A stretch of DNA of 64,000 bases from Mobula hypostoma. Its lineage: Eukaryota. The stretch is taken from assembly GCF_963921235.1 (NCBI RefSeq), contig NC_086108.1, forward strand, positions 30,690,001 to 30,754,000, read 5' to 3'. Below are positions 8,451-51,700 of the stretch, piece by piece. Positions within the stretch are counted from its first letter, which is position 1. The number at the start of each line of letters is the position of its first letter. Below the pieces are notes generated by a model. It saw nothing but the letters and a program-made list of their open reading frames with translations. It did no database searches and had not been told where the DNA came from. Position numbers and translations under genes: made by a program.

Positions 8451-8917
8451 GTTATTCTCAGGCTTGACCAATCTGTCTAAACTCACACATGTAAAATGAT
8501 AGCTTATGGGTTAATGGGGATTGGCTCAGAGAAGTGGAACAAAAAATATGTCCACAATTATTTTGGCGATACCAGTCCAAGAACAGAGGTGGCAGGATCA
8601 GGAAAGGTGCCATTGCAATAATTTGGTGTCCTGTGGGTGCAAGTTCTTGCATAGCATATTGTAACTGTTACCAGGCACTGTCATGCTTTTTAATAACAAT
8701 CTAAATATTTACTTATGGTAGCTGTCTAAATGATAGCCATTATGTAGTGAGCAGGGGAAATTCAAAACAGTAGCATGTAATCCTTTCCTTTCACCAGAGA
8801 ACAGATGAGCTTTTATTGATATATGGCTTGGAGAAGATTCTTTCTCTAAGTGGAGACCTGTGCCCAGTGGTGTACCACAAATATCAGTTCCCAGTCCCCT
8901 GCTGTTTAACACTTATA

Positions 8918-11732
8918 TGTCATGGTCTGGATCGGGGTCCCTTTAAATTTACCTTGTTTATGTTATGATCCAGACCATTGATTCCCTGTTTTCCCGTGTC
9001 CCTCGACTTTGGTGATTAGAGGCAATTAACACTCGGCTGAACCGGTAGTTTATAGCCCCAGCTTTCAGCCGTTCGGCGCGGGACCGTCTGCAAGGTCATC
9101 TAAGGTACGGTGTGCCAATGTTATCTGGCCGGAGCAAGCCTAGTCTCTGCCAAAGCGAGCGCCGGTAATTCGCCTCTCCTCACCAGAGCAACCCTGTCCA
9201 GTTACCTCGCCAAAGCGAGCCTGCAAAGTTTCCTCACCGAGGTGGGTCCGTCAGTTAACCCCGCCGGAGGAAATTAAGAACTGCTGTCTACTGTTCCCGG
9301 GCCGAGTCGAGAGCTTGCCACTACCCGAAGGCTCCAAGTCAAGTCCTGGCTCCGGAGGCATTCTAGCATCAAGTCAAGTCCTGTTCCTGGCGGCTTCCCA
9401 GTTCTGAGTCAAGTCCTGGCCCTGGTGGTCCGTGATACCTGTCCTACCCCCTTGTCTGAATCCCTTCTCTGCCCCTCTCATCTCTAGCCCTCGTCTGTAG
9501 CCCCCACCTGCACTTCGGTCTAGTTCCATCACCGGAGCTAGATAGGTACTGTCTGGTGTTCATTCGTGTTGGTCTTGTCTTGTCTTGTCCTCTTCTCTGT
9601 GGGGTAAGTCAGGCCGTCTTGCCGTTGCTCCACGGGGGGTCATGTTCTGTCTTGTCTTGTCCTCGCCTCCATGGGGTAAGTCAGGCCATCTTGCCGTTGC
9701 CTCTTGGAGGGTCATGAATCCCAACCCTATGTCCTGTACCCAAGGAGGGGTCCCGGCTCTCTGTTCTGTGTGTGAGTCCCGGCCCTATGTCCTATATCCA
9801 AGGAGGGGTCCCCACTCTGTGTTCTGTGTATGTGTCCACGGTTCCATTTACCTGCTTCCTGAGACCGAGGCTCTGTGTTCCCATGTTCCTCCTCTCCCTA
9901 GCCCATGTCATGTCCTTGCCTGATTCTGGGGTCTGAGCCCGAGGCAAGACCTGGGTACTGGGTCCTTGCCCACTCTCCTAGCCTCTTCATGTCTCCTCTA
10001 GTTCCGGGAGCTGATTCTGAGTCCAAGCCCAGACCCTTGTCCCATCCTAGTCGTAGTCCTGAGTCCTTGTCCAGTTTGCTACTCCTGCTCCTGCCTTGCT
10101 CTCCTGGTATCGAACAATAAACTAAATCTAAGTAACCTCACAAGATGTGTCTTGCATTTGGGTCCACCCTTGCTCCCAATGCTCCACCATTGTGACAGAA
10201 TGCTCTTGCCAAACATGGACCCAGCAGACACAGACTGTTTTTCCAAACTCTTTTCAGCCTGAAAGTCAAGGTGTTGTTGTTCTGTTTTGCCCGCCGGCCA
10301 AATCCCCCCCAGCCACTCGGGTCATCGATAATACAGGCAAATCTGTTGGTCACCTGGAGGCTCCCATTGGGAGGGGGACACTGTCATGGTCCGGATTGGG
10401 GTCCCTTTAAATTTGCCTTGTTTATGTTACGATCCGGACCATTGATTCCCTGTTTTCCCATGTCCCTCGACTTTGGTGATTAGAGGCAATTAACACTCGG
10501 CTGAACCGGTAGTTTATAGTCTCCGGCTTTCAGCCGTTCGGCGCAGGAGCGTCTGCAAAGTCATCTAAGGTACGGTGTGCCAATGTCATCTGGCCGGAGC
10601 AAGCCTAGTCTCTGCCAAAGCGAGTGCCGGTAATTCGCCTTTTCCTCACCGGAGCAATCCTCAGCGAGCCTGCAAAGTTTCCTCGCTGAGGTGGGTCCGT
10701 CAGTTAACCCTCCGGAGGGAATCAAGAACTGCTGTCTACTGTTCCCGGGCCAAGTCGAGAGCTCACCACTACCCGGAGGCACTAAGTCAAGTCCTTGCCC
10801 TGGCGGCATTCAAGCACCATGTCCTGTCCTGTCCTGTCCCTGGCGGCTTCCCAGTTCTGAGTCAAGACCTGGCCCTGGCGGTCTGTGATTCCTGTCCTAC
10901 CCCCTTGTCTGAATCCCCTCTCTGCCCCTCTCACCTCTAGCCCTCGTCTGCAGCCCCCACCTGCACTTCGGTCTAGTTCCATCGCCGGAGCTAGATAGGT
11001 ACTGTCTGGTGTTCATTCGTGTTGGTCTTGTCTTGTCTTGTCCTCGCCTCCGTGGGGTAATTCAGGCCGTCTTGCCGTTGCCCCGCGGGGGGTCATGTTC
11101 TGTCTTGTCTTGTCCTCGCCTCCGTGGGGTAACTCAGGCCGTCTTGCCGTTGCCCCATGGGGGGTCATGTCTTGTCGTGTCTTGTCCTCGCCTCCGTGGG
11201 GTAGGTCAGGCCGTCTTGCCGTTGCCCCGCTGAGGGTCATGAGTCCTGGCCCTGTACCCAAGGAGGGGTCCCAGCTCTCTGTTCTGTGTGCGAGTCCCGG
11301 CCCTATGTCCTGTACCCAAGGAGGGGTCCGACTCTGTGTTCTGTGTATGTGTCCATGGTTCCTTGTACCTGCTCTCCCCAGACCGAGGCTCTGTTTTCCA
11401 TGTTCCTCCTCTCCCTAGCCCATGTCATGTCCTCGCCTGGTTCTGGTGTCCGAGCCCGAGGCAAGACCCAGTACTGGGTCCTTGCCCGGTCTCTGGCTCG
11501 GAGTCCATACCCTAGCCTCTTCATGTCTCCTCTTGTTCTGGGAGCCGATTCCGAGTCCAAGCCAGACCCTTGGTCCCAGCCTAGTCGTAGTCCTGAGTAC
11601 TTGTCCAGTTTGCTATTTCCTGCTCCTGCCTTGCTCTCCTGGTATCGAACAATAAACTCAATCTAAGTAACCTCACAACATGTGTCTTGCATTTGGGTCC
11701 ACCCTTGCTCCCAATGCCCCTCCATTGTGACA
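8918..11732 (+). mobile_element. Non-autonomous Gypsy (Tf1/sushi-like) LTR element: LTR 8918-10197, 184-bp internal region, LTR 10382-11732
   Basis: Two direct repeats TGTCATGG...TGTGACA and a perfect 5-bp TSD TTATA (8913-8917 / 11733-11737). The internal part has a gag-like start ATGGACCCAGCAGAC (MDPAD) and a PPT GGGAGGGGG next to the 3' LTR. It splits a CR1 RT motif (SGVPQ..PLLFNTY|INNLDE). Confidence 0.92.
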
Positions 11733-11819
11733 TTATATTAATAATCTGGATGAGAATCTAGGTGGGGGAGGCAGGGGTAGTGTGCTTGTGGATGATTCTA
11801 AAATTAATAATACAGTGAA

Positions 11820-36127: not shown

Positions 36128-36436
36128 CTGTATTCACTTTAGTTACGAAAATAGAGCAATGGCTGCACATAATAAGTAATGATATTTTTGGCATTACGCT
36201 CTTAGAGATGCAACATTTTCAATATTTATATTATAATATGGTGTTTTGCACCTATGAGTTTCATTACTTTTCATCATGAACATGTTTGTTGTGAAGTTTT
36301 CCTCTTGGGACACTGGAGAGGAGGATGAGGGAGAAGAGATTCTCTATTCAAATGGATATGGTTTAGGGATAGAAAGGGATAAACTCTGGGGTTTTCATTT
36401 CACATGGGTTGACTAACCAGAAACCCCACCTTTACA

Positions 36437-39400
36437 TGCCTCTTTTTTTTCTCAATAAGCCTTGTATGGGATACCTTGTCAAATGCCTTGCTGAAATCTA
36501 TATACACTACATCTACTGCTCTACCATCACCGATGTGTTTAGACACATCCTCAAAAAATTCAATCAGGCTCGTAAGGCATGACCTGCCTTCCACAAAGCC
36601 ATGCTGACAATTCCTAATCATATTATGCCTCTCCAAATGTTCATAAATCCTGCCTGTCAGGATCTTCTCCATCAATTTACCAACCACTGAAGTAAGACTC
36701 ACTTGTCTATAATTTCCTGGGCTATCTCTACTCCCTTTCTTGAATAATAGAACACCACCCGCAACCCTCCAATTCTCTGGAACCTCTCCCGTCCCCATTA
36801 ATGATGCAAAGACCCTCGCCAGACACTCAGCAGTCTCCTCCCTCACCTTCCACCGTAGCCTGGGATACATCTCAACTGGTCCCGGTGACTTATCCAACTT
36901 GATGCTCTCCAAAAGCTCCAGCACATCCTCTTTCTTAATATCTACGTGCTCAAACTTTTCAGTCCGCTGTAAGTCATCCCTGCAATTGCCAAGATCCTTT
37001 TCCGTAGTGAAACGAAAACCAATTTCCCCCGGGATCAATAAAGTATGACTATGACTATGAATACTGAAGCAAAGTACTCATTAAGTACCTCTGCTGTCTC
37101 CTCTGGTTCCGTACACACCTTTCCACTGTCACACTTGATTGGTCCTATTCTGTCACATCTCATCCTCTTGCTCTTTACGTACTTGTGGAATGCCTTGGGG
37201 TTTTCCTTAATCCTGTCCGCTAAGGCCTTCTCATGGTCCCTTCTGGCTCTCCTAATTTCTTTATTAAGCTCCTTCCTGCTAACCTTATTATCTTCTAGAT
37301 CTCTATCATTACCTAGTTTTTTGAACCTTTCATAAGCTCTTCTTTTCTTCTTGACTAGATTTACAACAGCCTTTGTACACCATGGTTCCTGTACCCTACC
37401 ATCCTTTCCCTGTCTCATTGGAATGTACCGATGCAGAACTCCACACAAATATCCCCTGAATGTTTGCCACATTTCTTCCATACATTTCCCTGAGAATATC
37501 TGTTCCCAGTTTATGCTTCCAAGTTCCTTCCTGATAGCTTCATATTTTCCCTCACTCCAATTAAACGCTTTCCTAACTTGTCAGTTCCTATCCTTCTCCA
37601 ATGCTATGGTAAACAAGATAGAATTGTGATCACTGTCTCCAAAATGCTCTCCCACTGAGAGATCTGACACCTGACCAGGTTCATTTCCCCGTACCAGATC
37701 AAGTACAGACTCTCCTCTTGTAGGCTTATCTACATATTGTGTCAAGAAACCTTCCTGAACACACCTTACAAACTCCACCCCATCTAAATTGCTCACTCTA
37801 GGGACATGCAATCGATTGGGAAATTAAAATCTGCCACCGCGACAACCCTGTTAATATTACACCTTTCGAGAATCATCTCCCTATCTGCTCCTCGATGTCC
37901 CTGTTACTATTGGGTGGTCTATAAAAACCACCCAGTAGAGTTATTGACCCCTTCCTGTCTTAACTTCCACCCACAGAGTCTCTGTAGATAATCCCTCCTT
38001 GTCTTCCTCCTTTTCTGCAGCTGTGACACTATCTCTGATCAACAATGCCATGCCCCACCTCTTGTCTCCCTCCCCATCCTTTCTGAAACATCTAAAGCCT
38101 GGCACTCAAAGTAACCATTCCTGCCCCTGAGCCATCCAAGTCTCTGTAATGGCCACTACATCATAGCTCCAAGTACTGATCCATGCTCTAAACTCATCTG
38201 CTTTGTTCATAATACTCCTTGCATTAAAATAGACACATCTCAAACCATTGGTCTGAGCTCATCCCTTCTCTATCACCTACGTATCCTCCCTCTCGCACTG
38301 TCTCCAAGCTTTCTCTATTTGTGAGCCAACCGCCTCTTCCTATGTCTCTTCAGTTTGGTTCCCATCCCCCAGCAATCCCAGTTTCAACTCTCTCCAATAG
38401 CCTTAGCAAACCTTCCCGCCGGGTTATTGGTCCCCCTGGGATTCAAGTGACCCGTCCTTTTTGTACAGGCTACTCCTGCCCCAAAAGAGGTCCCGAAGAT
38501 TCAGAAATCTGAATCCCTGTCCCCTGCTCCAATCCCTTAGCCACGCATTTATCCTCCACCTCACCTCACTCACTGTCACTGGCACAGGTAGTAATCTCGA
38601 GATGACTACCTTTGTGGTCCTGCTTCTCAACTTCCTTCCTAACTCCCTGTAGTCTGCTTTCAGGGCCTCCTCCCTTTTCCAACCTATGTCGTTGGTGCCG
38701 AAATGTATCACAAACTCTGGCTGTTCTGCTTCCCACTTCAGGATATCTTGGATGCTATCAGAAACAACCCAGATCCTGGCACCTGGGAGGCAAACTATGA
38801 TCCGTGTTTCTTTCCTGCGTCCTCAGAATCACCTGTCTGACCCCCTAACTATAGAGTCACCTGTCACTGCTGCCATCCTCTTCCTTTCCCGACCCTTCTG
38901 AGCCACAGGGCCGGACTCTGTGCCAGAAGCACGGCCACTGCTGTTCCTCCAGTAAGCCACCCCACCCAACAGTACTCAAGCAGGAGTTTTTATTGTCAAG
39001 GGATACAGCAACAGGGGTACTCTCTAGCCTCTGACTCCTGCCCCTTTCTCTCCTGACTGAAACCCATTCTTCTGTCTCCCGAGGCCCCGGTATGACTACC
39101 TGCCTATAGTTCCTCTCCATCACCTCCTCACTTTCCCTGACCAGACGAAGGTCATCGATCTGCATCTCCAGTTCCCTAACATGGGCCCTAAGGAGCTGCA
39201 ACTCGACACATCTGGTGCAGATGTGGCCATCCGGGAGGCTGGGAGACTCCTGGCCTTCCACATCTGACACCAAGCACAGAACACTGGCCTCACATACATT
39301 CTTCCTGTCTGTTTTCTACACAGGCAACCTACCTCGCCTTGATCTGTTATCGCCAAAGATCCATTGAACCTAAGCCCTCCTACTGTCTCCCTCTACTCCA

Positions 39401-46079: not shown

Positions 46080-48250
46080 GACGATAATAATTAAAAAACA
46101 CAAAAATATAAATACATAAGCAAGCATATATACATCGATTGGTTGTACGTCCATAAATGTGCCTATGCAGTATATAAAGAGACCGACAGGAAATACAAAG
46201 TGTAATAGAGTAGAGGTGGAGTTAGTGGGTGGAGATGTTGATCAGCCTTACTGCTTGGGGAAAGTAACTGTTTTTGATTCTGGTAATCCTGGCATGGATA
46301 CTGTGTATCCTCCTCCATGACAAGAGTGGGACAAATAATCCATGAGCAGGGTGGGTGGGTCCTTCATGATGTTACTGGCCCTCTTATGGCAAATTTCTTT
46401 ATATATGTCCTTGATGGCAGGTGGGCTGATGACAGTGATGTGTTGGGCAGCTTTCATTACCCGTTCATTACCCTATTCACTGCGATGCAGTTTCCATACC
46501 AAGCGGTGATGCAGCTTGTCAGGACGCTCGCTAATGCATATCTGTAGAATGATGTGAGTATGGATGTGCAAAGTTCAGCTCTCCTCAGCGCCCACAGAAA
46601 ATATGGGGATTGATATGCTTTCTTTACTGTGTAGGATGTGTTCTGAGACCATGAGAGGTTGTGTGTGATGTGCACTCCCAGGATATTGGACCTGCTTGTA
46701 GATTCTGCTGCTGTGCCACTGATGTAAAAGGTATGTGTGTGATGCGAGTTCTCCTGAGGTTGATAGCCATCTCCTTTGTTTTGTTGACATTAAGGAAGAG
46801 GTTATTGTCTGACATTAGGACACAAGCTCTTCCACTTCCTCTTTGTGAGCTGGCTCTGTCATAAGGTGGGCGTTGATGGTGGACCCAACTGCAAGGCACA
46901 GACACTGAAGTACAAGGAACAGGACTAGGACTAGAGTTAAGCAAGCAAGGAAGTAGGGAAGAAAGGATGCTGGACATTGACACAGGCCCTGGACGAGATT
47001 AGGATGAAGGGCCTGAGCTAGGACATGGACAAGAAACACAGTACTCAAACAAGGTAATAGGAACAAGGATCCTGGCCTAGTGACATGGAACTCTGGAACC
47101 AGAGCCTGGACAGGGACCAAGAACCTGGGTCTTGGTTGGGACTCGGAACCTGGGACTTGGTTGGGACTCGGAACCAGAACCCAGGTCTAGGCTAAAAATC
47201 AGGACTAGGATCTTGGCAAGAACAGGACATGGAACTTCTGGACAGGACGAGGTTCTTGGACGTGGCTAGGACTGAACGAAGTACTCCTGGGCTGGTTGAG
47301 GCACCAGGACAGGACGAGACCCCGAAGCATTGACTTGGTCTTGGGAGACAGGAACATAGAACACAGAGCCTTGGTGGTCTTCGGAGACAGGAACGCAGAA
47401 CACAGAGCCTTGGTAATCTTGGAAGACAGGAACGCAGAACACAGAGCCTTGGTCTTGGGAGATGGGAACATGGAACACAGAGCCAGGACCCCTCCTTGGG
47501 AACAGAACATAGGGCCAGGACTCATACACAGAGAGACAGTTCCTAACACAAGGTAGCGGCAAACGGCCGGACCTACCTAGCAAAGGCATGAACACAGAGA
47601 TGGTTTTCAACACAAGGTAGCGGCAAACGGCCAGACCTACCTAGCGAAGGTGTGGACACAGAGAGAGTTCCAAACAACGATAGACAGTTCCTTATCTAGA
47701 CACAACAAGGCTCCGGTTTTGCTCCGGCGGTAGAAATTGACAGCGATACAGGCGAGGACGCAGGTGAGGTTGCAGGCAAGTCTTCAGGCCAAGGTTTCAG
47801 GCAGAGGTTGCAGGCAAAGCTTCAGGAGGAAGGTGAAAGAAAAAGAACAGTTCAGCAAATGAAGCTATTTATGTAACCAGCCCAAAATCAGAATTAAGTG
47901 CCTCAATTAAGGCACACAACAGGACAAGGGAAAACCAGAAAACCTGGAATACGGACCGATGGACTGGACCGTGAACTGGAATGCGGACTTCACGGACCGG
48001 ACCATGACAGTCTCATCTTTGATGGTGATGACTCCCACCACTGTTGTCATCAGTGAACTGAACTTGATGATGTGACCACACGGGTGTTTGGCCATGCAGT
48101 CACCCGTGAGCAGAGTGTACAGTAATGGGCTCAGCACACAGCCCTTGAGAGGCGCCTGTGTTGAGGATGATGGGGAGGGAGAGTGGTTGTGCATCCTGAT
48201 GCTGACTGCTTTAGTGAGGCATTGAGAAGTGTAGACAGAGACTATGGAAG
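46080..48250 (-). mobile_element. Rex1/Babar 3' part split by a solo LTR
   Basis: [29 protein letters not shown] | AHKEEVEEL..LNVNKTKEM..SVLTSCITAWYGN. Confidence 0.85.
46857..48009 (-). repeat. Solo LTR related to the LTRs at 8918-11732
   Basis: On the minus strand it starts TGTCATGGTCCGG and ends ...TATGACA. Shares ttgca.ttgggtccacc near the end and aggaggggtc blocks. TSD ggctc / gtctc (4/5). Internal ~39-bp tandem repeats at 47340-47480. Confidence 0.85.

Positions 48251-48544: not shown

Positions 48545-48546
<2 letters not shown>

Positions 48547-48579
<33 letters not shown>
48547..48579. repeat. (GT)n microsatellite, about 16 units
   Basis: Directly visible in the sequence. Confidence 0.95.
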
Positions 48580-48644: not shown

Positions 48645-51600
48645 TTTTACCTTACTTTACTTTATTGTCGCCAAACAATTGATACTAGAATGTACAATCA
48701 TCATAGTGATATTTGATTCTGTGCTTCCCACTCCCTGGATTATAAATCGATAGTAAAAATTAAACATTTAAATTATAAATCATAAATAGAAAATATAAAA
48801 ATGGAAAGTAAGGTAGTGCAAAAAAACTGAGATGGAGGTCCGGATATTTGGAGGCTACAACCCAGATCCAGGTCAGGATCCGTTTGGCAGTCTTATCACA
48901 GTTGGAAAGAAGCTGTTCCCAAATCTGGCCATACAAGTCTTCAAGCTCCTGAGCCTTCTCCCGGAGGGAAGAGGGACAAAAAGTGTGTTGGCTGGGTGGG
49001 TTGTGTCCTTGATTATCCTGGCAGCAGTGCTCCGACAGCGTGCGGTGTAAAGTGAGTCGAAGGACGGAAGATTGGTTTGTGTGATGTGCTGTGCCGTGTT
49101 CACGATCTTCTGCAGCTTCTTCCGGTCTTGGACAGGACAATTTCCATACCAGGTTGTGATGCACCCTAGAAGAATGCTTTCTATGGTGCATCTATAAAAA
49201 TTAGTGAGGGTTTTAGGGGACAGGCCAAATTTCTTTAGTTTTCTCAGGAAGTAAAGGCGCTGGTGGGCCTTCTTGGCAGTGAACTCTGCTTGGTTGGACC
49301 AAGTCAGGTCATTTCTGATATTGACTCCGAGGAACTTAAAGCTTTTGACCTGTTCCACTTGCGCACCACCAATGTAAATTAGGTCGTGTGGTCCGCTATT
49401 CCTTCTGAAGTCAACAACCAATTCCTTCGTCTTGCTGACGTTGAGGGGTAGGTTATTGTCTTCACACCATGCCACGAGGTTCTTAATTTCCTCTCTGTAC
49501 TCAAACTCATTATTACCCGAGATACGGCCTACAATTGTTGTGTCATCAGTCAACTTATATATTGAGTTGGATGGAAACTTGGCTACACAATCATGGGTGT
49601 ACAGTGAGTACAGCAGGGGGCTGAGTACACAGCCTTGTGGGGCACCGGTGCTCAGAGTGATTGTAGAGGAGAGCTTGTCCCCTATTTTTACAGCCTGGGT
49701 CCTGTCTGTGAGGAAGTTGAAGATCCAGCTGCAGATCTGAGCGCTAAGGCCCAGGTTCCGGAGCTTAGGAATCAGTTTATTTGGAATGATGGTATTAAAG
49801 GCAGAGCTGTAGTCATTGAAAAGGAGCCTTACATATGCATCTTAATTCTCCAGGTGTTCTAAGGAGGAATGTAGGGCCAGAGAGATGGCATCTGCCATTG
49901 ACCTGTTGCTCCGGTAGGCGAATTGCAAAGCGTCGAGGTTGACCAGTAGGCTGTGGTTGATGTGTGCCATAACCAATCGCTCAAAGCACTTCATAGCAAT
50001 TGATGTCAGAGCCACAGGTCGATAGTCATTCAGACATGCCACCTTGCTCTTCTTCGGCACTGGGATTATCGTTGCCTTCTTAAAACACAAGGGGATCTTA
50101 GACTGAAGCAAGGAGCAGCTGAAGATGTCAGCAAACACTCCAGCTAGCTCGCTTGCACAGGCCCAGAGAACCTGGCCCGGGACACCATCTGGGCCTGTCG
50201 CCTTCCTTGGATTTATCTTCAGGAAGGCCCTCCTAACATCCTCCTCGGTGACGTTGAATCTCGACGCCACCAGGTCCGTTCATCCGGAGGGAGCGGGACG
50301 CTCCTCTTCTGTTCGAATCTTGCATAGAATACGTTAAGTTCGTCAGGAAGAGAAGTGCCATAGTTATTGATAGTCCCAGCCTTTTCTTTGCGCCCAATGA
50401 TCTCATTTAGACCCTGCCATAGTCTACTGGCATCCCTCTGGTTAGCCTGGGCTTCCAACTTGGCTCGATATTGCCTTTTGGCACCCTTAATGGCTTTCCG
50501 GAGTTCACGCCTGTATTCCATGTAGCGACTGGTATCCCCAGACCTAAAAGCCGCAGCTCTGGCCTTTAAAAGGGACTTGACCTCATAATTCATCCAAGGT
50601 TTCCAGTTAGGGAATACCTGGATTGTCTTGCGAGACACACAGTCCTCCGTGCATTTCCAAATAAAGTCCGTGACAGCTGAGGCATACTCATCGAGGTTAG
50701 CTGCCGAGTCCTTGAATACTAACCAGTCCACCGATTCAAAGCAGTCATGGAGGACCTCATCCGTTTCCTCCGTCCAACGCGACACTACTTTTGACACCGT
50801 GACTCACCGCTTCAGTTTCTGTTTTTAAGCCGGGAGGCGGAGTACGGCCTGATGGTCTGATTTTCCAAAGTGAGGTCGTGGGATGGAACGGTAGGCATCC
50901 TTGACTGCTGTGTAGCAGTGGTCAAGTATACTCGGGCCTCTAGTGGGGCAGGAGACATGTTGGTATAACTTTGGTAGTGCCTTTCTGAGGTTGGCCTGGT
51001 TTAAGTCCCCGGCTGTCATGAGCAAAGCCGCTGGATACCTGGTCTCAAGTTCACTGATGTTGACATACAGTATGTTCAAAGTACACTCCACATCCACCTG
51101 GGGGGGAATGTAGACCGCTGTCAGTATGACCGAGGCGAATTCCCGTGGCAGATAGTAGGGACAACACTTCACCGACAGGTGTTCCAAATCCGGGCTGCAG
51201 GAGCTTGTCAGTGCCACTGTGTCCGAGCACCACGCAGTGTTGATCAGCAGGCAGACACCACCTCCCCTCGTCTTGCCCGAAGACGCCGTGCGGTCCATCC
51301 GATGGATCAAAAATCCCTCCGGTCGGATGGCACAGTCGGGGGTGGCAGGGGAGAGCCAGGTCTCGGTGAAACAGAATACACAGCGGTTCTGCATCTCCCT
51401 GCAGTAGGTGAGTCTCCCTTTAAGATGATCCACCTTGTTCTCTATGGCTTGCACATTAGCTAGTAGGATGGTGGGCATAGGGACCCGAAAGCCCTTCAGC
51501 TTCAATCTGACCAGCAGCCCAGCTCTTTTTTCACGCTTCCTCGGTAAATAATGCATCTTTCCAAGTTTCCATCGATGCAGTGTATTGTTGTCAGCTCTTT

Positions 51601-51700
51601 GAGGTTGGTGGACGCATTCCGCGGGGATCGACTGGCAGGTCACGTCGTTGGGTGCTCCGGGTCGGGCCCAGTGACGGGGGAGGCTCCGCTGCCACTTCCA
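48645..51700 (-). mobile_element. Young, nearly full-length Rex1/Babar LINE (APE + RT), inserted in an older Rex1 (48310-48640, 51720-51920)
   Basis: Long ORFs 50825-51643 (ILLANVQAIENK, FTETWL, AVYIPP, GDLNQ, LDHCY, GKSDH), 50219-50797, 49842-50270 (LNDYRPVALTS, QFAYR) and 48873-49553 (DDTTIVG). Only a few stops or frameshifts; CpG retained. Confidence 0.95.

What the first reader, a model, noticed from the sequence alone, without database searches (positions are those of the whole stretch)
10195..10555. Putative tRNA-independent self-priming structure in a mini LTR retroelement
Seen: the 5' LTR is not followed by a TGG tRNA-type PBS but by CA|GAATGCTCTTGC (10196-10209). This can pair with GCAGGAGCGTCTG in the LTR (10543-10555; LTR1 equivalent GCGGGACCGTCTG at 9078-9090) through 10 consecutive pairs including two G-U, plus 3 more after a one-base bulge. 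That LTR segment lies about 30 nt downstream of a TTTATAG box (10513 / 9049), where the transcript would be expected to start. Established: Tf1/sushi-group Gypsy elements prime reverse transcription with their own RNA 5' end. Inference: this element retains the self-priming cis signal.
Basis: partly seen in the sequence, partly recalled or inferred. Interest (0 to 1): 0.75.

Follow-up and report, generated by a model that had tools for sequence, protein, structure and literature searches.

The report
Likely self-priming signal, mini LTR retroelement
An old, protein-less jumping element in a ray genome has, where a tRNA primer site should be, ten bases that can pair with the likely start of its own RNA; this is the known Tf1/sushi way of starting reverse transcription, and it remains unproven here.

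Summary
An LTR-184 bp-LTR element lies at 8918-11732, with TG..CA ends, a 5-bp target duplication and a polypurine tract. It has no TGG-type tRNA site after its 5' LTR. Ten bases starting two bases after the LTR (10200-10209) pair with 10543-10552 in the 3' LTR, two of the pairs being G-U.

Taken alone the helix is chance-level: 25-41% of control 20-mers do as well against this LTR. In the real 5' LTR (9078-9087) a C-C mismatch breaks it.

Its geometry is what Tf1-type self-priming demands. The primer-site arm sits at the canonical place. The LTR arm starts 30 nt after the only TATA-like box in the LTR. Controls meet both conditions in only 0.08-0.35% of trials. The short-U3, long-R, short-U5 layout fits published Sushi-clade LTRs.

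I could obtain no transcription start, no other copies for covariation and no autonomous partner.

Verdict: a probable (about 0.6) relic of a known mechanism in a very abundant non-autonomous family. It is unusual only in that the two arms lie 1.1-1.2 kb apart. The scan noted the same signature before on other pieces of this genome. New member of a known kind; modest interest.

The parts
8913..8917 (.). Target-site duplication TTATA, left copy
   Evidence: Same 5 bases at 11733-11737 directly outside the LTR ends.
8918..10197 (+). 5' LTR (1280 nt), TGTCATG...TGTGACA
   Evidence: Direct repeat of 10382-11732. 8.3% mismatches over 1259 aligned columns.
9049..9055 (+). TATA-like box TTTATAG in the 5' LTR (LTR position 132)
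   Evidence: The only TTTATA/TATAAA/TATATA-type motif in the LTR.
9078..9090 (+). 5'-LTR copy of the candidate self-primer; pairing with the primer site is broken here
   Evidence: C-C mismatch at 9084. Pair probability with the primer site is 0.001 in the fold of 9078-10260.
10116..10121 (+). Only AATAAA of the 5' LTR, about 80 nt before its end (3' LTR copy at 11651-11656)
   Evidence: Motif scan. It implies R of about 1.05-1.1 kb and U5 of about 55-60 nt if transcription starts near 9078.
10146..10166 (+). U5 arm of an inverted repeat that encloses the primer site
   Evidence: Pairs with 10216-10232 (17 pairs, two small bulges) in the local fold. Z-score is -2.2 and 6 of 200 shuffles fold as well. 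Its core is conserved in a diverged related solo LTR.
10198..10381 (+). Internal domain (184 nt), non-coding
   Evidence: Lies between the LTRs. It has no protein relatives and no Rfam match. Other copies with the same LTR-internal-LTR junctions exist in public runs (table 8, records 2, 3, 11, 12).
10200..10209 (+). Candidate primer-binding site, after a 2-nt spacer GA (10198-10199)
   Evidence: Pairs with 10543-10552. There is no TGG until 10217.
10216..10232 (+). Leader arm of the inverted repeat round the primer site
10369..10378 (+). Polypurine tract GGGAGGGGGA, 3 nt before the 3' LTR
   Evidence: Sequence.
10382..11732 (+). 3' LTR (1351 nt); carries one more 72-nt tandem unit than the 5' LTR
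10513..10519 (+). TATA-like box in the 3' LTR
10543..10555 (+). 3'-LTR copy of the candidate self-primer, 30 nt after the start of the TATA-like box
   Evidence: 10 contiguous pairs with 10200-10209 plus 3 more after a bulge. Pair probability is about 0.92 in a 1253-nt fold.
11733..11737 (.). Target-site duplication TTATA, right copy

Best explanation
This is a dead copy of a very abundant, protein-less LTR retroelement family of a ray, moved in trans by an autonomous Gypsy element of the Tf1/sushi kind. Inferred mechanism: transcription starts about 30 nt after the TATA-like box, at LTR position about 162. It runs through about 1.1 kb of R and U5 into the leader. The first 10 or so bases of the RNA then fold back onto the complementary 10-base site two bases after the LTR. 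The partner's RNase H cuts behind the duplex, and the freed 3' end primes minus-strand DNA without a tRNA. Shown here: the element's anatomy, the lack of a tRNA-type site, the complementarity in one LTR and its canonical geometry. Inferred: the transcription start, the cleavage, the partner, and that decay after insertion broke the pairing in the 5' LTR.
For: Bona fide LTR element: TG..CA ends, 5-bp duplication and polypurine tract. There is no TGG within 19 nt of the LTR and no tRNA gene in the window. The primer-site arm begins exactly after the usual 2-nt spacer. The LTR arm begins 30 nt after the only TATA-like box. A helix of 10 or more pairs meeting both constraints occurs in 0.08% of shuffled sites and 0.35% of random 20-mers. 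It is the longest helix anywhere in LTR2. In a 1253-nt RNA made of the 3'-LTR version from 10543 plus the leader, the helix is in the minimum-energy fold with pair probability about 0.92. The LTR has one early AT box, a single AATAAA near its 3' end, and ends TGTCATG...TGTGACA. This is the layout and end motifs reported for Sushi-clade LTRs (PMC3601003). A U5-leader inverted repeat encloses the site, like the U5-IR structure cited as required by Tf1 (title of reference 206 in PMC7175516). Self-priming is established for Tf1 and predicted for vertebrate sushi elements (PMC7175516, PMC6317226, PMC4600332). Other copies with the same junctions exist, so the mini-element amplified as such.
Against: Unconstrained, a 10-pair helix with G-U allowed is chance-level at 25-41%, and an equal-energy rival site exists. 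The helix has only 8 Watson-Crick pairs. In the real 5' LTR it is broken, and the fold pairs the site with 9128-9136 instead. The TATA-like box is only assumed to be the promoter, and no transcription start data exist. R would be about 1.05-1.1 kb, far longer than the R lengths quoted for retroviruses (11-150 bp, PMC3601003). No cross-copy conservation or covariation could be measured. There is no coding sequence to place the family by phylogeny.
Confidence: 0.6

Rival explanations
1. Chance complementarity. The element is primed by something else that is not recognisable here, or its true primer site has decayed in this old copy. The helix with the LTR is then a coincidence found by looking for one.
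For: 25-41% of control 20-mers form a helix of 10 or more pairs somewhere in the LTR. Two of the ten pairs are G-U. The pairing is absent from the 5' LTR. The copy is old: 8.3% LTR-LTR mismatches, many of CpG type.
Against: The coincidence would also have to place both arms at the canonical positions, which happens in 0.08-0.35% of controls. It is the single longest helix in LTR2. The LTR layout fits the one clade known for self-priming.
Confidence: 0.25
2. Self-priming, but from a different start. Transcription begins at a TATA-less promoter further down the LTR, giving a conventional long U3 with the tandem repeats in it. Another LTR segment then pairs with the site, for example GGCAAGA at 9944-9950 (7 Watson-Crick pairs, kept in both LTRs, about 170 nt before AATAAA) or 9128-9136.
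For: Duplex scan and folds. Tandem repeats usually lie in U3 (my own knowledge). R would then be about 190 nt, a normal size.
Against: These helices are shorter (6-7 pairs) and fully expected by chance. None has a TATA-like box upstream.
Confidence: 0.08
3. Priming by a host tRNA fragment or an internal tRNA segment, as in copia-like half-tRNA priming, or by the TGG-starting stretch at 10217, 19 nt after the LTR.
For: Half-tRNA sites exist in some LTR elements (PMC6317226). A TGG does occur at 10217.
Against: Half-tRNA sites were found only in Ty1/copia lineages in that survey. The TGG stretch is too far from the LTR and is better explained as the leader arm of the U5-leader stem. The tRNA it implies would begin with C, which is rare in eukaryotes (my own knowledge). 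No host tRNA set was available, so this was not properly tested.
Confidence: 0.07

Closest known systems
Tf1/Tf2 of Schizosaccharomyces pombe (self-primed Ty3/gypsy elements)
   Same: No tRNA site. A short site right after the 5' LTR is complementary to the presumed first 10-11 bases of the element's own RNA. A stem built from U5 lies next to the site.
   Different: Tf1 is autonomous and its mechanism is shown by experiment (first 11 bases, RNase H cut between bases 11 and 12; PMC7175516). Here there are no genes, the start is only predicted, the duplex is 10 pairs with 2 G-U, and the arms lie 1.1-1.2 kb apart.
Vertebrate sushi-group chromoviruses (sushi-ichi and the V-clade; Butler et al. 2001, cited in PMC6317226)
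   Same: Vertebrate host; predicted self-priming. The LTR has TGTYANR...CNTNACA-like ends, an early AT-rich box and AATAAA close to the 3' end (PMC3601003).
   Different: Those are full-length elements with gag-pol and LTRs averaging about 570 bp in the training set. This is a 2.8-kb element that is 93% LTR, with no coding sequence to test membership.
TRIM and LARD non-autonomous LTR elements
   Same: Two LTRs, target duplication, primer site and polypurine tract; no ORF; trans-mobilised; high copy number.
   Different: TRIMs have very short LTRs and are small overall. LARDs have long non-coding interiors. Here the LTRs are giant (1.3 kb) and the interior minimal (184 bp).

Membership tests
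Tf1/sushi-type self-priming LTR retroelements | No tRNA 3'-end (TGG...) primer-binding site next to the 5' LTR | tested here: met
   The first TGG is 19 nt after the LTR end. ARAGORN finds no tRNA in the window. No host tRNA set was available for a full check.
Tf1/sushi-type self-priming LTR retroelements | The site just after the 5' LTR is complementary to a segment of the LTR | tested here: inconclusive
   10 pairs (2 G-U) with the 3' LTR copy, but broken by a C-C mismatch in the 5' LTR copy. Chance-level without positional constraints; rare with them.
Tf1/sushi-type self-priming LTR retroelements | That LTR segment is the very 5' end of the element's RNA | not testable with these tools
   The only support is its position 30 nt after the sole TATA-like box. 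The public runs are contigs and show no starts (table 6: none).
Tf1/sushi-type self-priming LTR retroelements | RNase H cleavage behind the duplex releases the primer | not testable with these tools
   A biochemical step; there is no data.
Tf1/sushi-type self-priming LTR retroelements | U5-IR-like stem-loop beside the primer site | tested here: inconclusive
   A 17-pair interrupted stem, 10146-10166 with 10216-10232, encloses the site. Z-score is -2.2 and 6 of 200 shuffles fold as well. It is not formed in the global minimum-energy fold.
Tf1/sushi-type self-priming LTR retroelements | RT/IN/chromodomain phylogeny inside the Tf1/sushi clade | not testable with these tools
   The element has no coding sequence. 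There are no Gypsy domains in the window's ten longest ORFs (150 aa or more) and no Gypsy hallmark motifs in the six-frame translation.
Tf1/sushi-type self-priming LTR retroelements | Pairing kept across copies (conservation or covariation) | not testable with these tools
   No other copy's letters could be fetched. Read laying gives no linked sequence.
Sushi-clade LTR (Benachenhou et al. 2013 model) | Ends TGTYANR...CNTNACA; early AT-rich box; AATAAA close to the 3' end | tested here: met
   The 5' end TGTCATG fits 7 of 7 positions and the 3' end TGTGACA fits 6 of 7. TTTATA is at position 132. The single AATAAA lies about 80 nt from the end. The end motifs also fit rGmr1, so they are not specific.
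TRIM (terminal-repeat retrotransposon in miniature) | Very short LTRs and small total size | tested here: not met
   The LTRs are 1280 and 1351 nt and the element is 2815 nt.
Non-autonomous LTR retroelement (general) | Two LTRs, target duplication, polypurine tract, no protein-coding interior, multiple copies | tested here: met

The most novel reading that the evidence does not exclude
A protein-less family that makes up a visible share of a devil-ray genome replicates by self-priming across 1.1-1.2 kb. Its R region, about 1 kb long, would carry the tandem repeats usually found in U3. It would be the longest-range self-primer and one of the longest R regions described, and a natural case for asking how a 5' end finds a site more than 1 kb away.
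Probability: 0.4. Interest if true: 0.45.

Novelty: new member of a known kind. Interest (0 to 1): 0.3.

Why it matters
If true, it adds cartilaginous fish and a gene-less, hugely amplified derivative to the list of self-primed retroelements. It would also show that the fold-back can work over more than 1 kb of R-U5. That bears on how LTR annotation tools should treat elements without a tRNA site. It does not change the understanding of the mechanism, which has been known since 1995 for Tf1 and predicted since 2001 for vertebrate sushi elements.

Tried and rejected
- **More copies in the window.** BLAST and nhmmer of the element against the rest of the window found only one diverged solo LTR (46857-48009, minus strand). 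It has no primer site, so it gives no covariation test.
- **Protein word search.** I searched the 92-aa open frame across the LTR end, primer site and interior, hoping to reach other copies through spurious ORFs. It returned nothing.
- **Metagenome scans.** Two scans with conserved 23-mers of the LTR returned nothing.
- **Sequencing runs.** All runs found were contigs. They show that the LTR is extremely abundant, that the interior is about 40 times less so, and that possible RNA runs hold all parts of the LTR. They show no starts, ends or linked variants.
- **Earlier findings by sequence.** Blank.
- **Other scans.** ARAGORN and Rfam on the element found nothing. Pfam on the window's ten ORFs of 150 aa or more, and motif scans, found LINE pieces only and no Gypsy partner.
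- **Primary papers.** The primary Tf1 papers (PMC1369541, PMC109269, PMC6388632) are not held. The mechanism is cited from reviews.
- **Rejected idea.** I considered the TGG-starting stretch at 10217 as a displaced tRNA site. I rejected it on distance and because it forms the leader arm of the U5-leader stem.

Full report
**What is there**

The finding sits inside a complete LTR element at 8918-11732.
- It has two direct repeats of 1280 and 1351 nt.
- Each repeat begins TGTCATG and ends TGTGACA.
- The element is flanked by a perfect 5-bp duplication, TTATA, at 8913-8917 and 11733-11737.
- Only 184 nt lie between the LTRs (10198-10381). That stretch ends in a polypurine run (10369-10378) 3 nt before the 3' LTR.
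- The flanks on either side join into a LINE reverse-transcriptase-like reading frame, so the element inserted into an older LINE (reading; my own recognition of the motif).
- The LTRs differ at 8.3% of 1259 aligned columns. There are 71 transitions, 30 of them of CpG type, and 34 transversions. The 3' LTR also has one extra 72-nt tandem unit. The copy is therefore old and dead.

**Checking the observation**

A script finds ten contiguous pairs, eight Watson-Crick and two G-U, between 10543-10552 (3' LTR) and 10200-10209. It is the longest helix between the first 20 post-LTR bases and that LTR. A fold adds three more pairs after a one-base bulge.

In the 5' LTR, the copy an RNA would actually start from, the equivalent segment (9078-9087) has a C-C mismatch in the middle, and the helix is gone.

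**Is it more than chance?**

Not on its own. 25% of shuffled primer sites and 41% of random 20-mers from the window form a helix of 10 or more pairs somewhere in the 1351-nt LTR. Another LTR site (position about 197) binds with equal predicted energy.

The Tf1 model, however, fixes both arms in advance. The site must start just after the LTR, and the other arm must be the RNA's 5' end.
- The site starts after the canonical 2-nt spacer.
- The LTR arm starts 30 nt after TTTATAG. That is the only TTTATA/TATAAA/TATATA-type motif in the whole LTR.
- I required the site to begin 0-4 nt after the CA and the LTR arm to begin 25-35 nt after that box. Then 163 of 200,000 shuffles (0.08%) and 693 of 200,000 random 20-mers (0.35%) qualify.

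The caveat is that the box's role as promoter is assumed, not shown.

**Structure**

I folded two RNAs.
- **3'-LTR version.** This is a hypothetical RNA made of the 3'-LTR letters from 10543 to the LTR end, joined to the real leader (1253 nt). I used it only for folding. The 5' end-to-site helix is in the minimum-energy structure, with pair probabilities of about 0.92.
- **Real 5' LTR version (9078-10260).** The pair probability is 0.001. The site pairs instead with 9128-9136.

Locally, the site is enclosed by a 17-pair interrupted stem between U5 (10146-10166) and the leader (10216-10232). Its z-score is -2.2, and 6 of 200 shuffles fold as well. This recalls the U5-IR structure named as required for Tf1 in the title of a paper listed in PMC7175516.

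The core of the U5 arm is one of the few stretches conserved in a diverged relative, a solo LTR at 46857-48009 on the minus strand. That solo LTR is about 62-70% identical and has the duplication GAGAC/GAGCC. It also has an AT-rich ATAAATA at nearly the same distance from its 5' end, position 138 against 132.

**LTR layout**

With one early AT box and a single AATAAA about 80 nt from the 3' end, the LTR would have this layout:

| Part | Approximate length |
|---|---|
| U3 | 160 nt |
| R | 1.05-1.1 kb |
| U5 | 55-60 nt |

Benachenhou et al. describe this peculiarity for Sushi-clade LTRs: an early AT-rich stretch, AATAAA unusually close to the 3' end, and ends TGTYANR...CNTNACA (PMC3601003). The ends here fit 7 of 7 and 6 of 7 positions. 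They also fit rGmr1, so this is supportive but not specific.

An R of about 1 kb is far beyond the 11-150 bp quoted there for retroviruses. It would also put the 72-nt and 58-nt tandem repeats in R.

**Family context**

- Public DNA contigs laid at 80% likeness or better give summed word depths of 4x10^4 to 2x10^5 over the LTR. The interior (10228-10329) gives about 2.4x10^3.
- Several contigs, 86-94% alike, span the LTR-end/interior and interior/LTR-start junctions (tables 2 and 8). The mini-element therefore amplified as such, and most LTRs are solo or belong to other interiors.
- Runs guessed to be RNA hold contigs over all of the LTR. They give no starts or ends, and they may contain DNA.
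- Neither the window's ten ORFs of 150 aa or more (LINE pieces only) nor a six-frame scan for hallmark motifs shows any Gypsy coding sequence. The partner is unknown.

**Mechanism and its standing**

Self-priming is established for Tf1: the first 11 bases pair with the site, and RNase H cuts between bases 11 and 12 (PMC7175516). It is proposed for Tj1 (PMC4600332). It is predicted for Tf1/sushi elements of fungi, vertebrates and mosses (PMC6317226, citing Butler et al. 2001 and Lin and Levin 1997).

The best reading is that this family used the same route, with its partner's RT/RNase H acting in trans. I put this at about 0.6. The departures from Watson-Crick pairing, and the mismatch in the 5' LTR, are compatible with decay in an old copy. 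One of the two LTR-LTR differences inside the arm is a CpG-type transition. That explanation is an inference.

The rivals are:
- pure coincidence with an unknown primer (0.25);
- self-priming from another, TATA-less start (0.08);
- a tRNA-fragment primer (0.07).

**Earlier notes of this scan**

Notes on other pieces of the same genome, called a devil ray there, report the same signature. One follow-up describes giant LTRs with the two sites 1.2-1.7 kb apart. These are unchecked AI notes. I used them as leads and for the host's identity, not as evidence. They do mean that this is not the first sighting.

**Verdict**

The mechanism is plausible and of a known kind. The decisive tests (transcription start, cross-copy covariation, the partner's phylogeny, the host tRNA set) could not be run. 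It is a new member of a known kind, of modest interest.

A functional assay that would need an active copy is referred.

Noticed in passing
window 46857-48009 (minus strand): A diverged relative of the same LTR family (about 62-70% identity) is present as a solo LTR. It has the duplication GAGAC/GAGCC and lies inside a LINE reverse-transcriptase reading frame. It keeps the TGTCATGG start, an AT-rich box at position 138 and the U5 motif TTGGGTCCACC.
   Followed up: partly
window 9576-9837 and 11025-11241: There are 72-nt tandem units inside the LTR: 2 in the 5' LTR and 3 in the 3' LTR. The 5' LTR also has 58-nt units. The two LTRs of one insertion differ by a whole unit, so the repeat number changed after insertion.
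   Followed up: partly
window 8800-8917 and 11733-11800: The element's flanks join into a LINE (CR1/L2-like) reverse-transcriptase motif, so the mini-element interrupted an older LINE copy. Further LINE RT and endonuclease pieces lie at 36400-37038 and 48873-51643.
   Followed up: partly
window 10126-10227 in run X12 (tables 2 and 4): In one run guessed to be RNA, two deep contigs (depth about 2300) match the LTR's U5 but carry six small deletions between 10167 and 10186. That run also shows no depth over this element's interior (10228-10329). This may be an expressed sister subfamily, possibly with a different interior.
   Followed up: no
window 10442-10657 in run X12 (table 8, record 21): A 1967-nt contig from a possible RNA run matches the LTR only from LTR position 61 onward. 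Its first 1749 nt are unlike this element. It could be the interior of a longer relative or the autonomous partner; its letters were not available.
   Followed up: no
window 48546-48579 (minus strand reading): A (CA)n microsatellite of about 17 units lies just upstream of the solo-LTR region.
   Followed up: no
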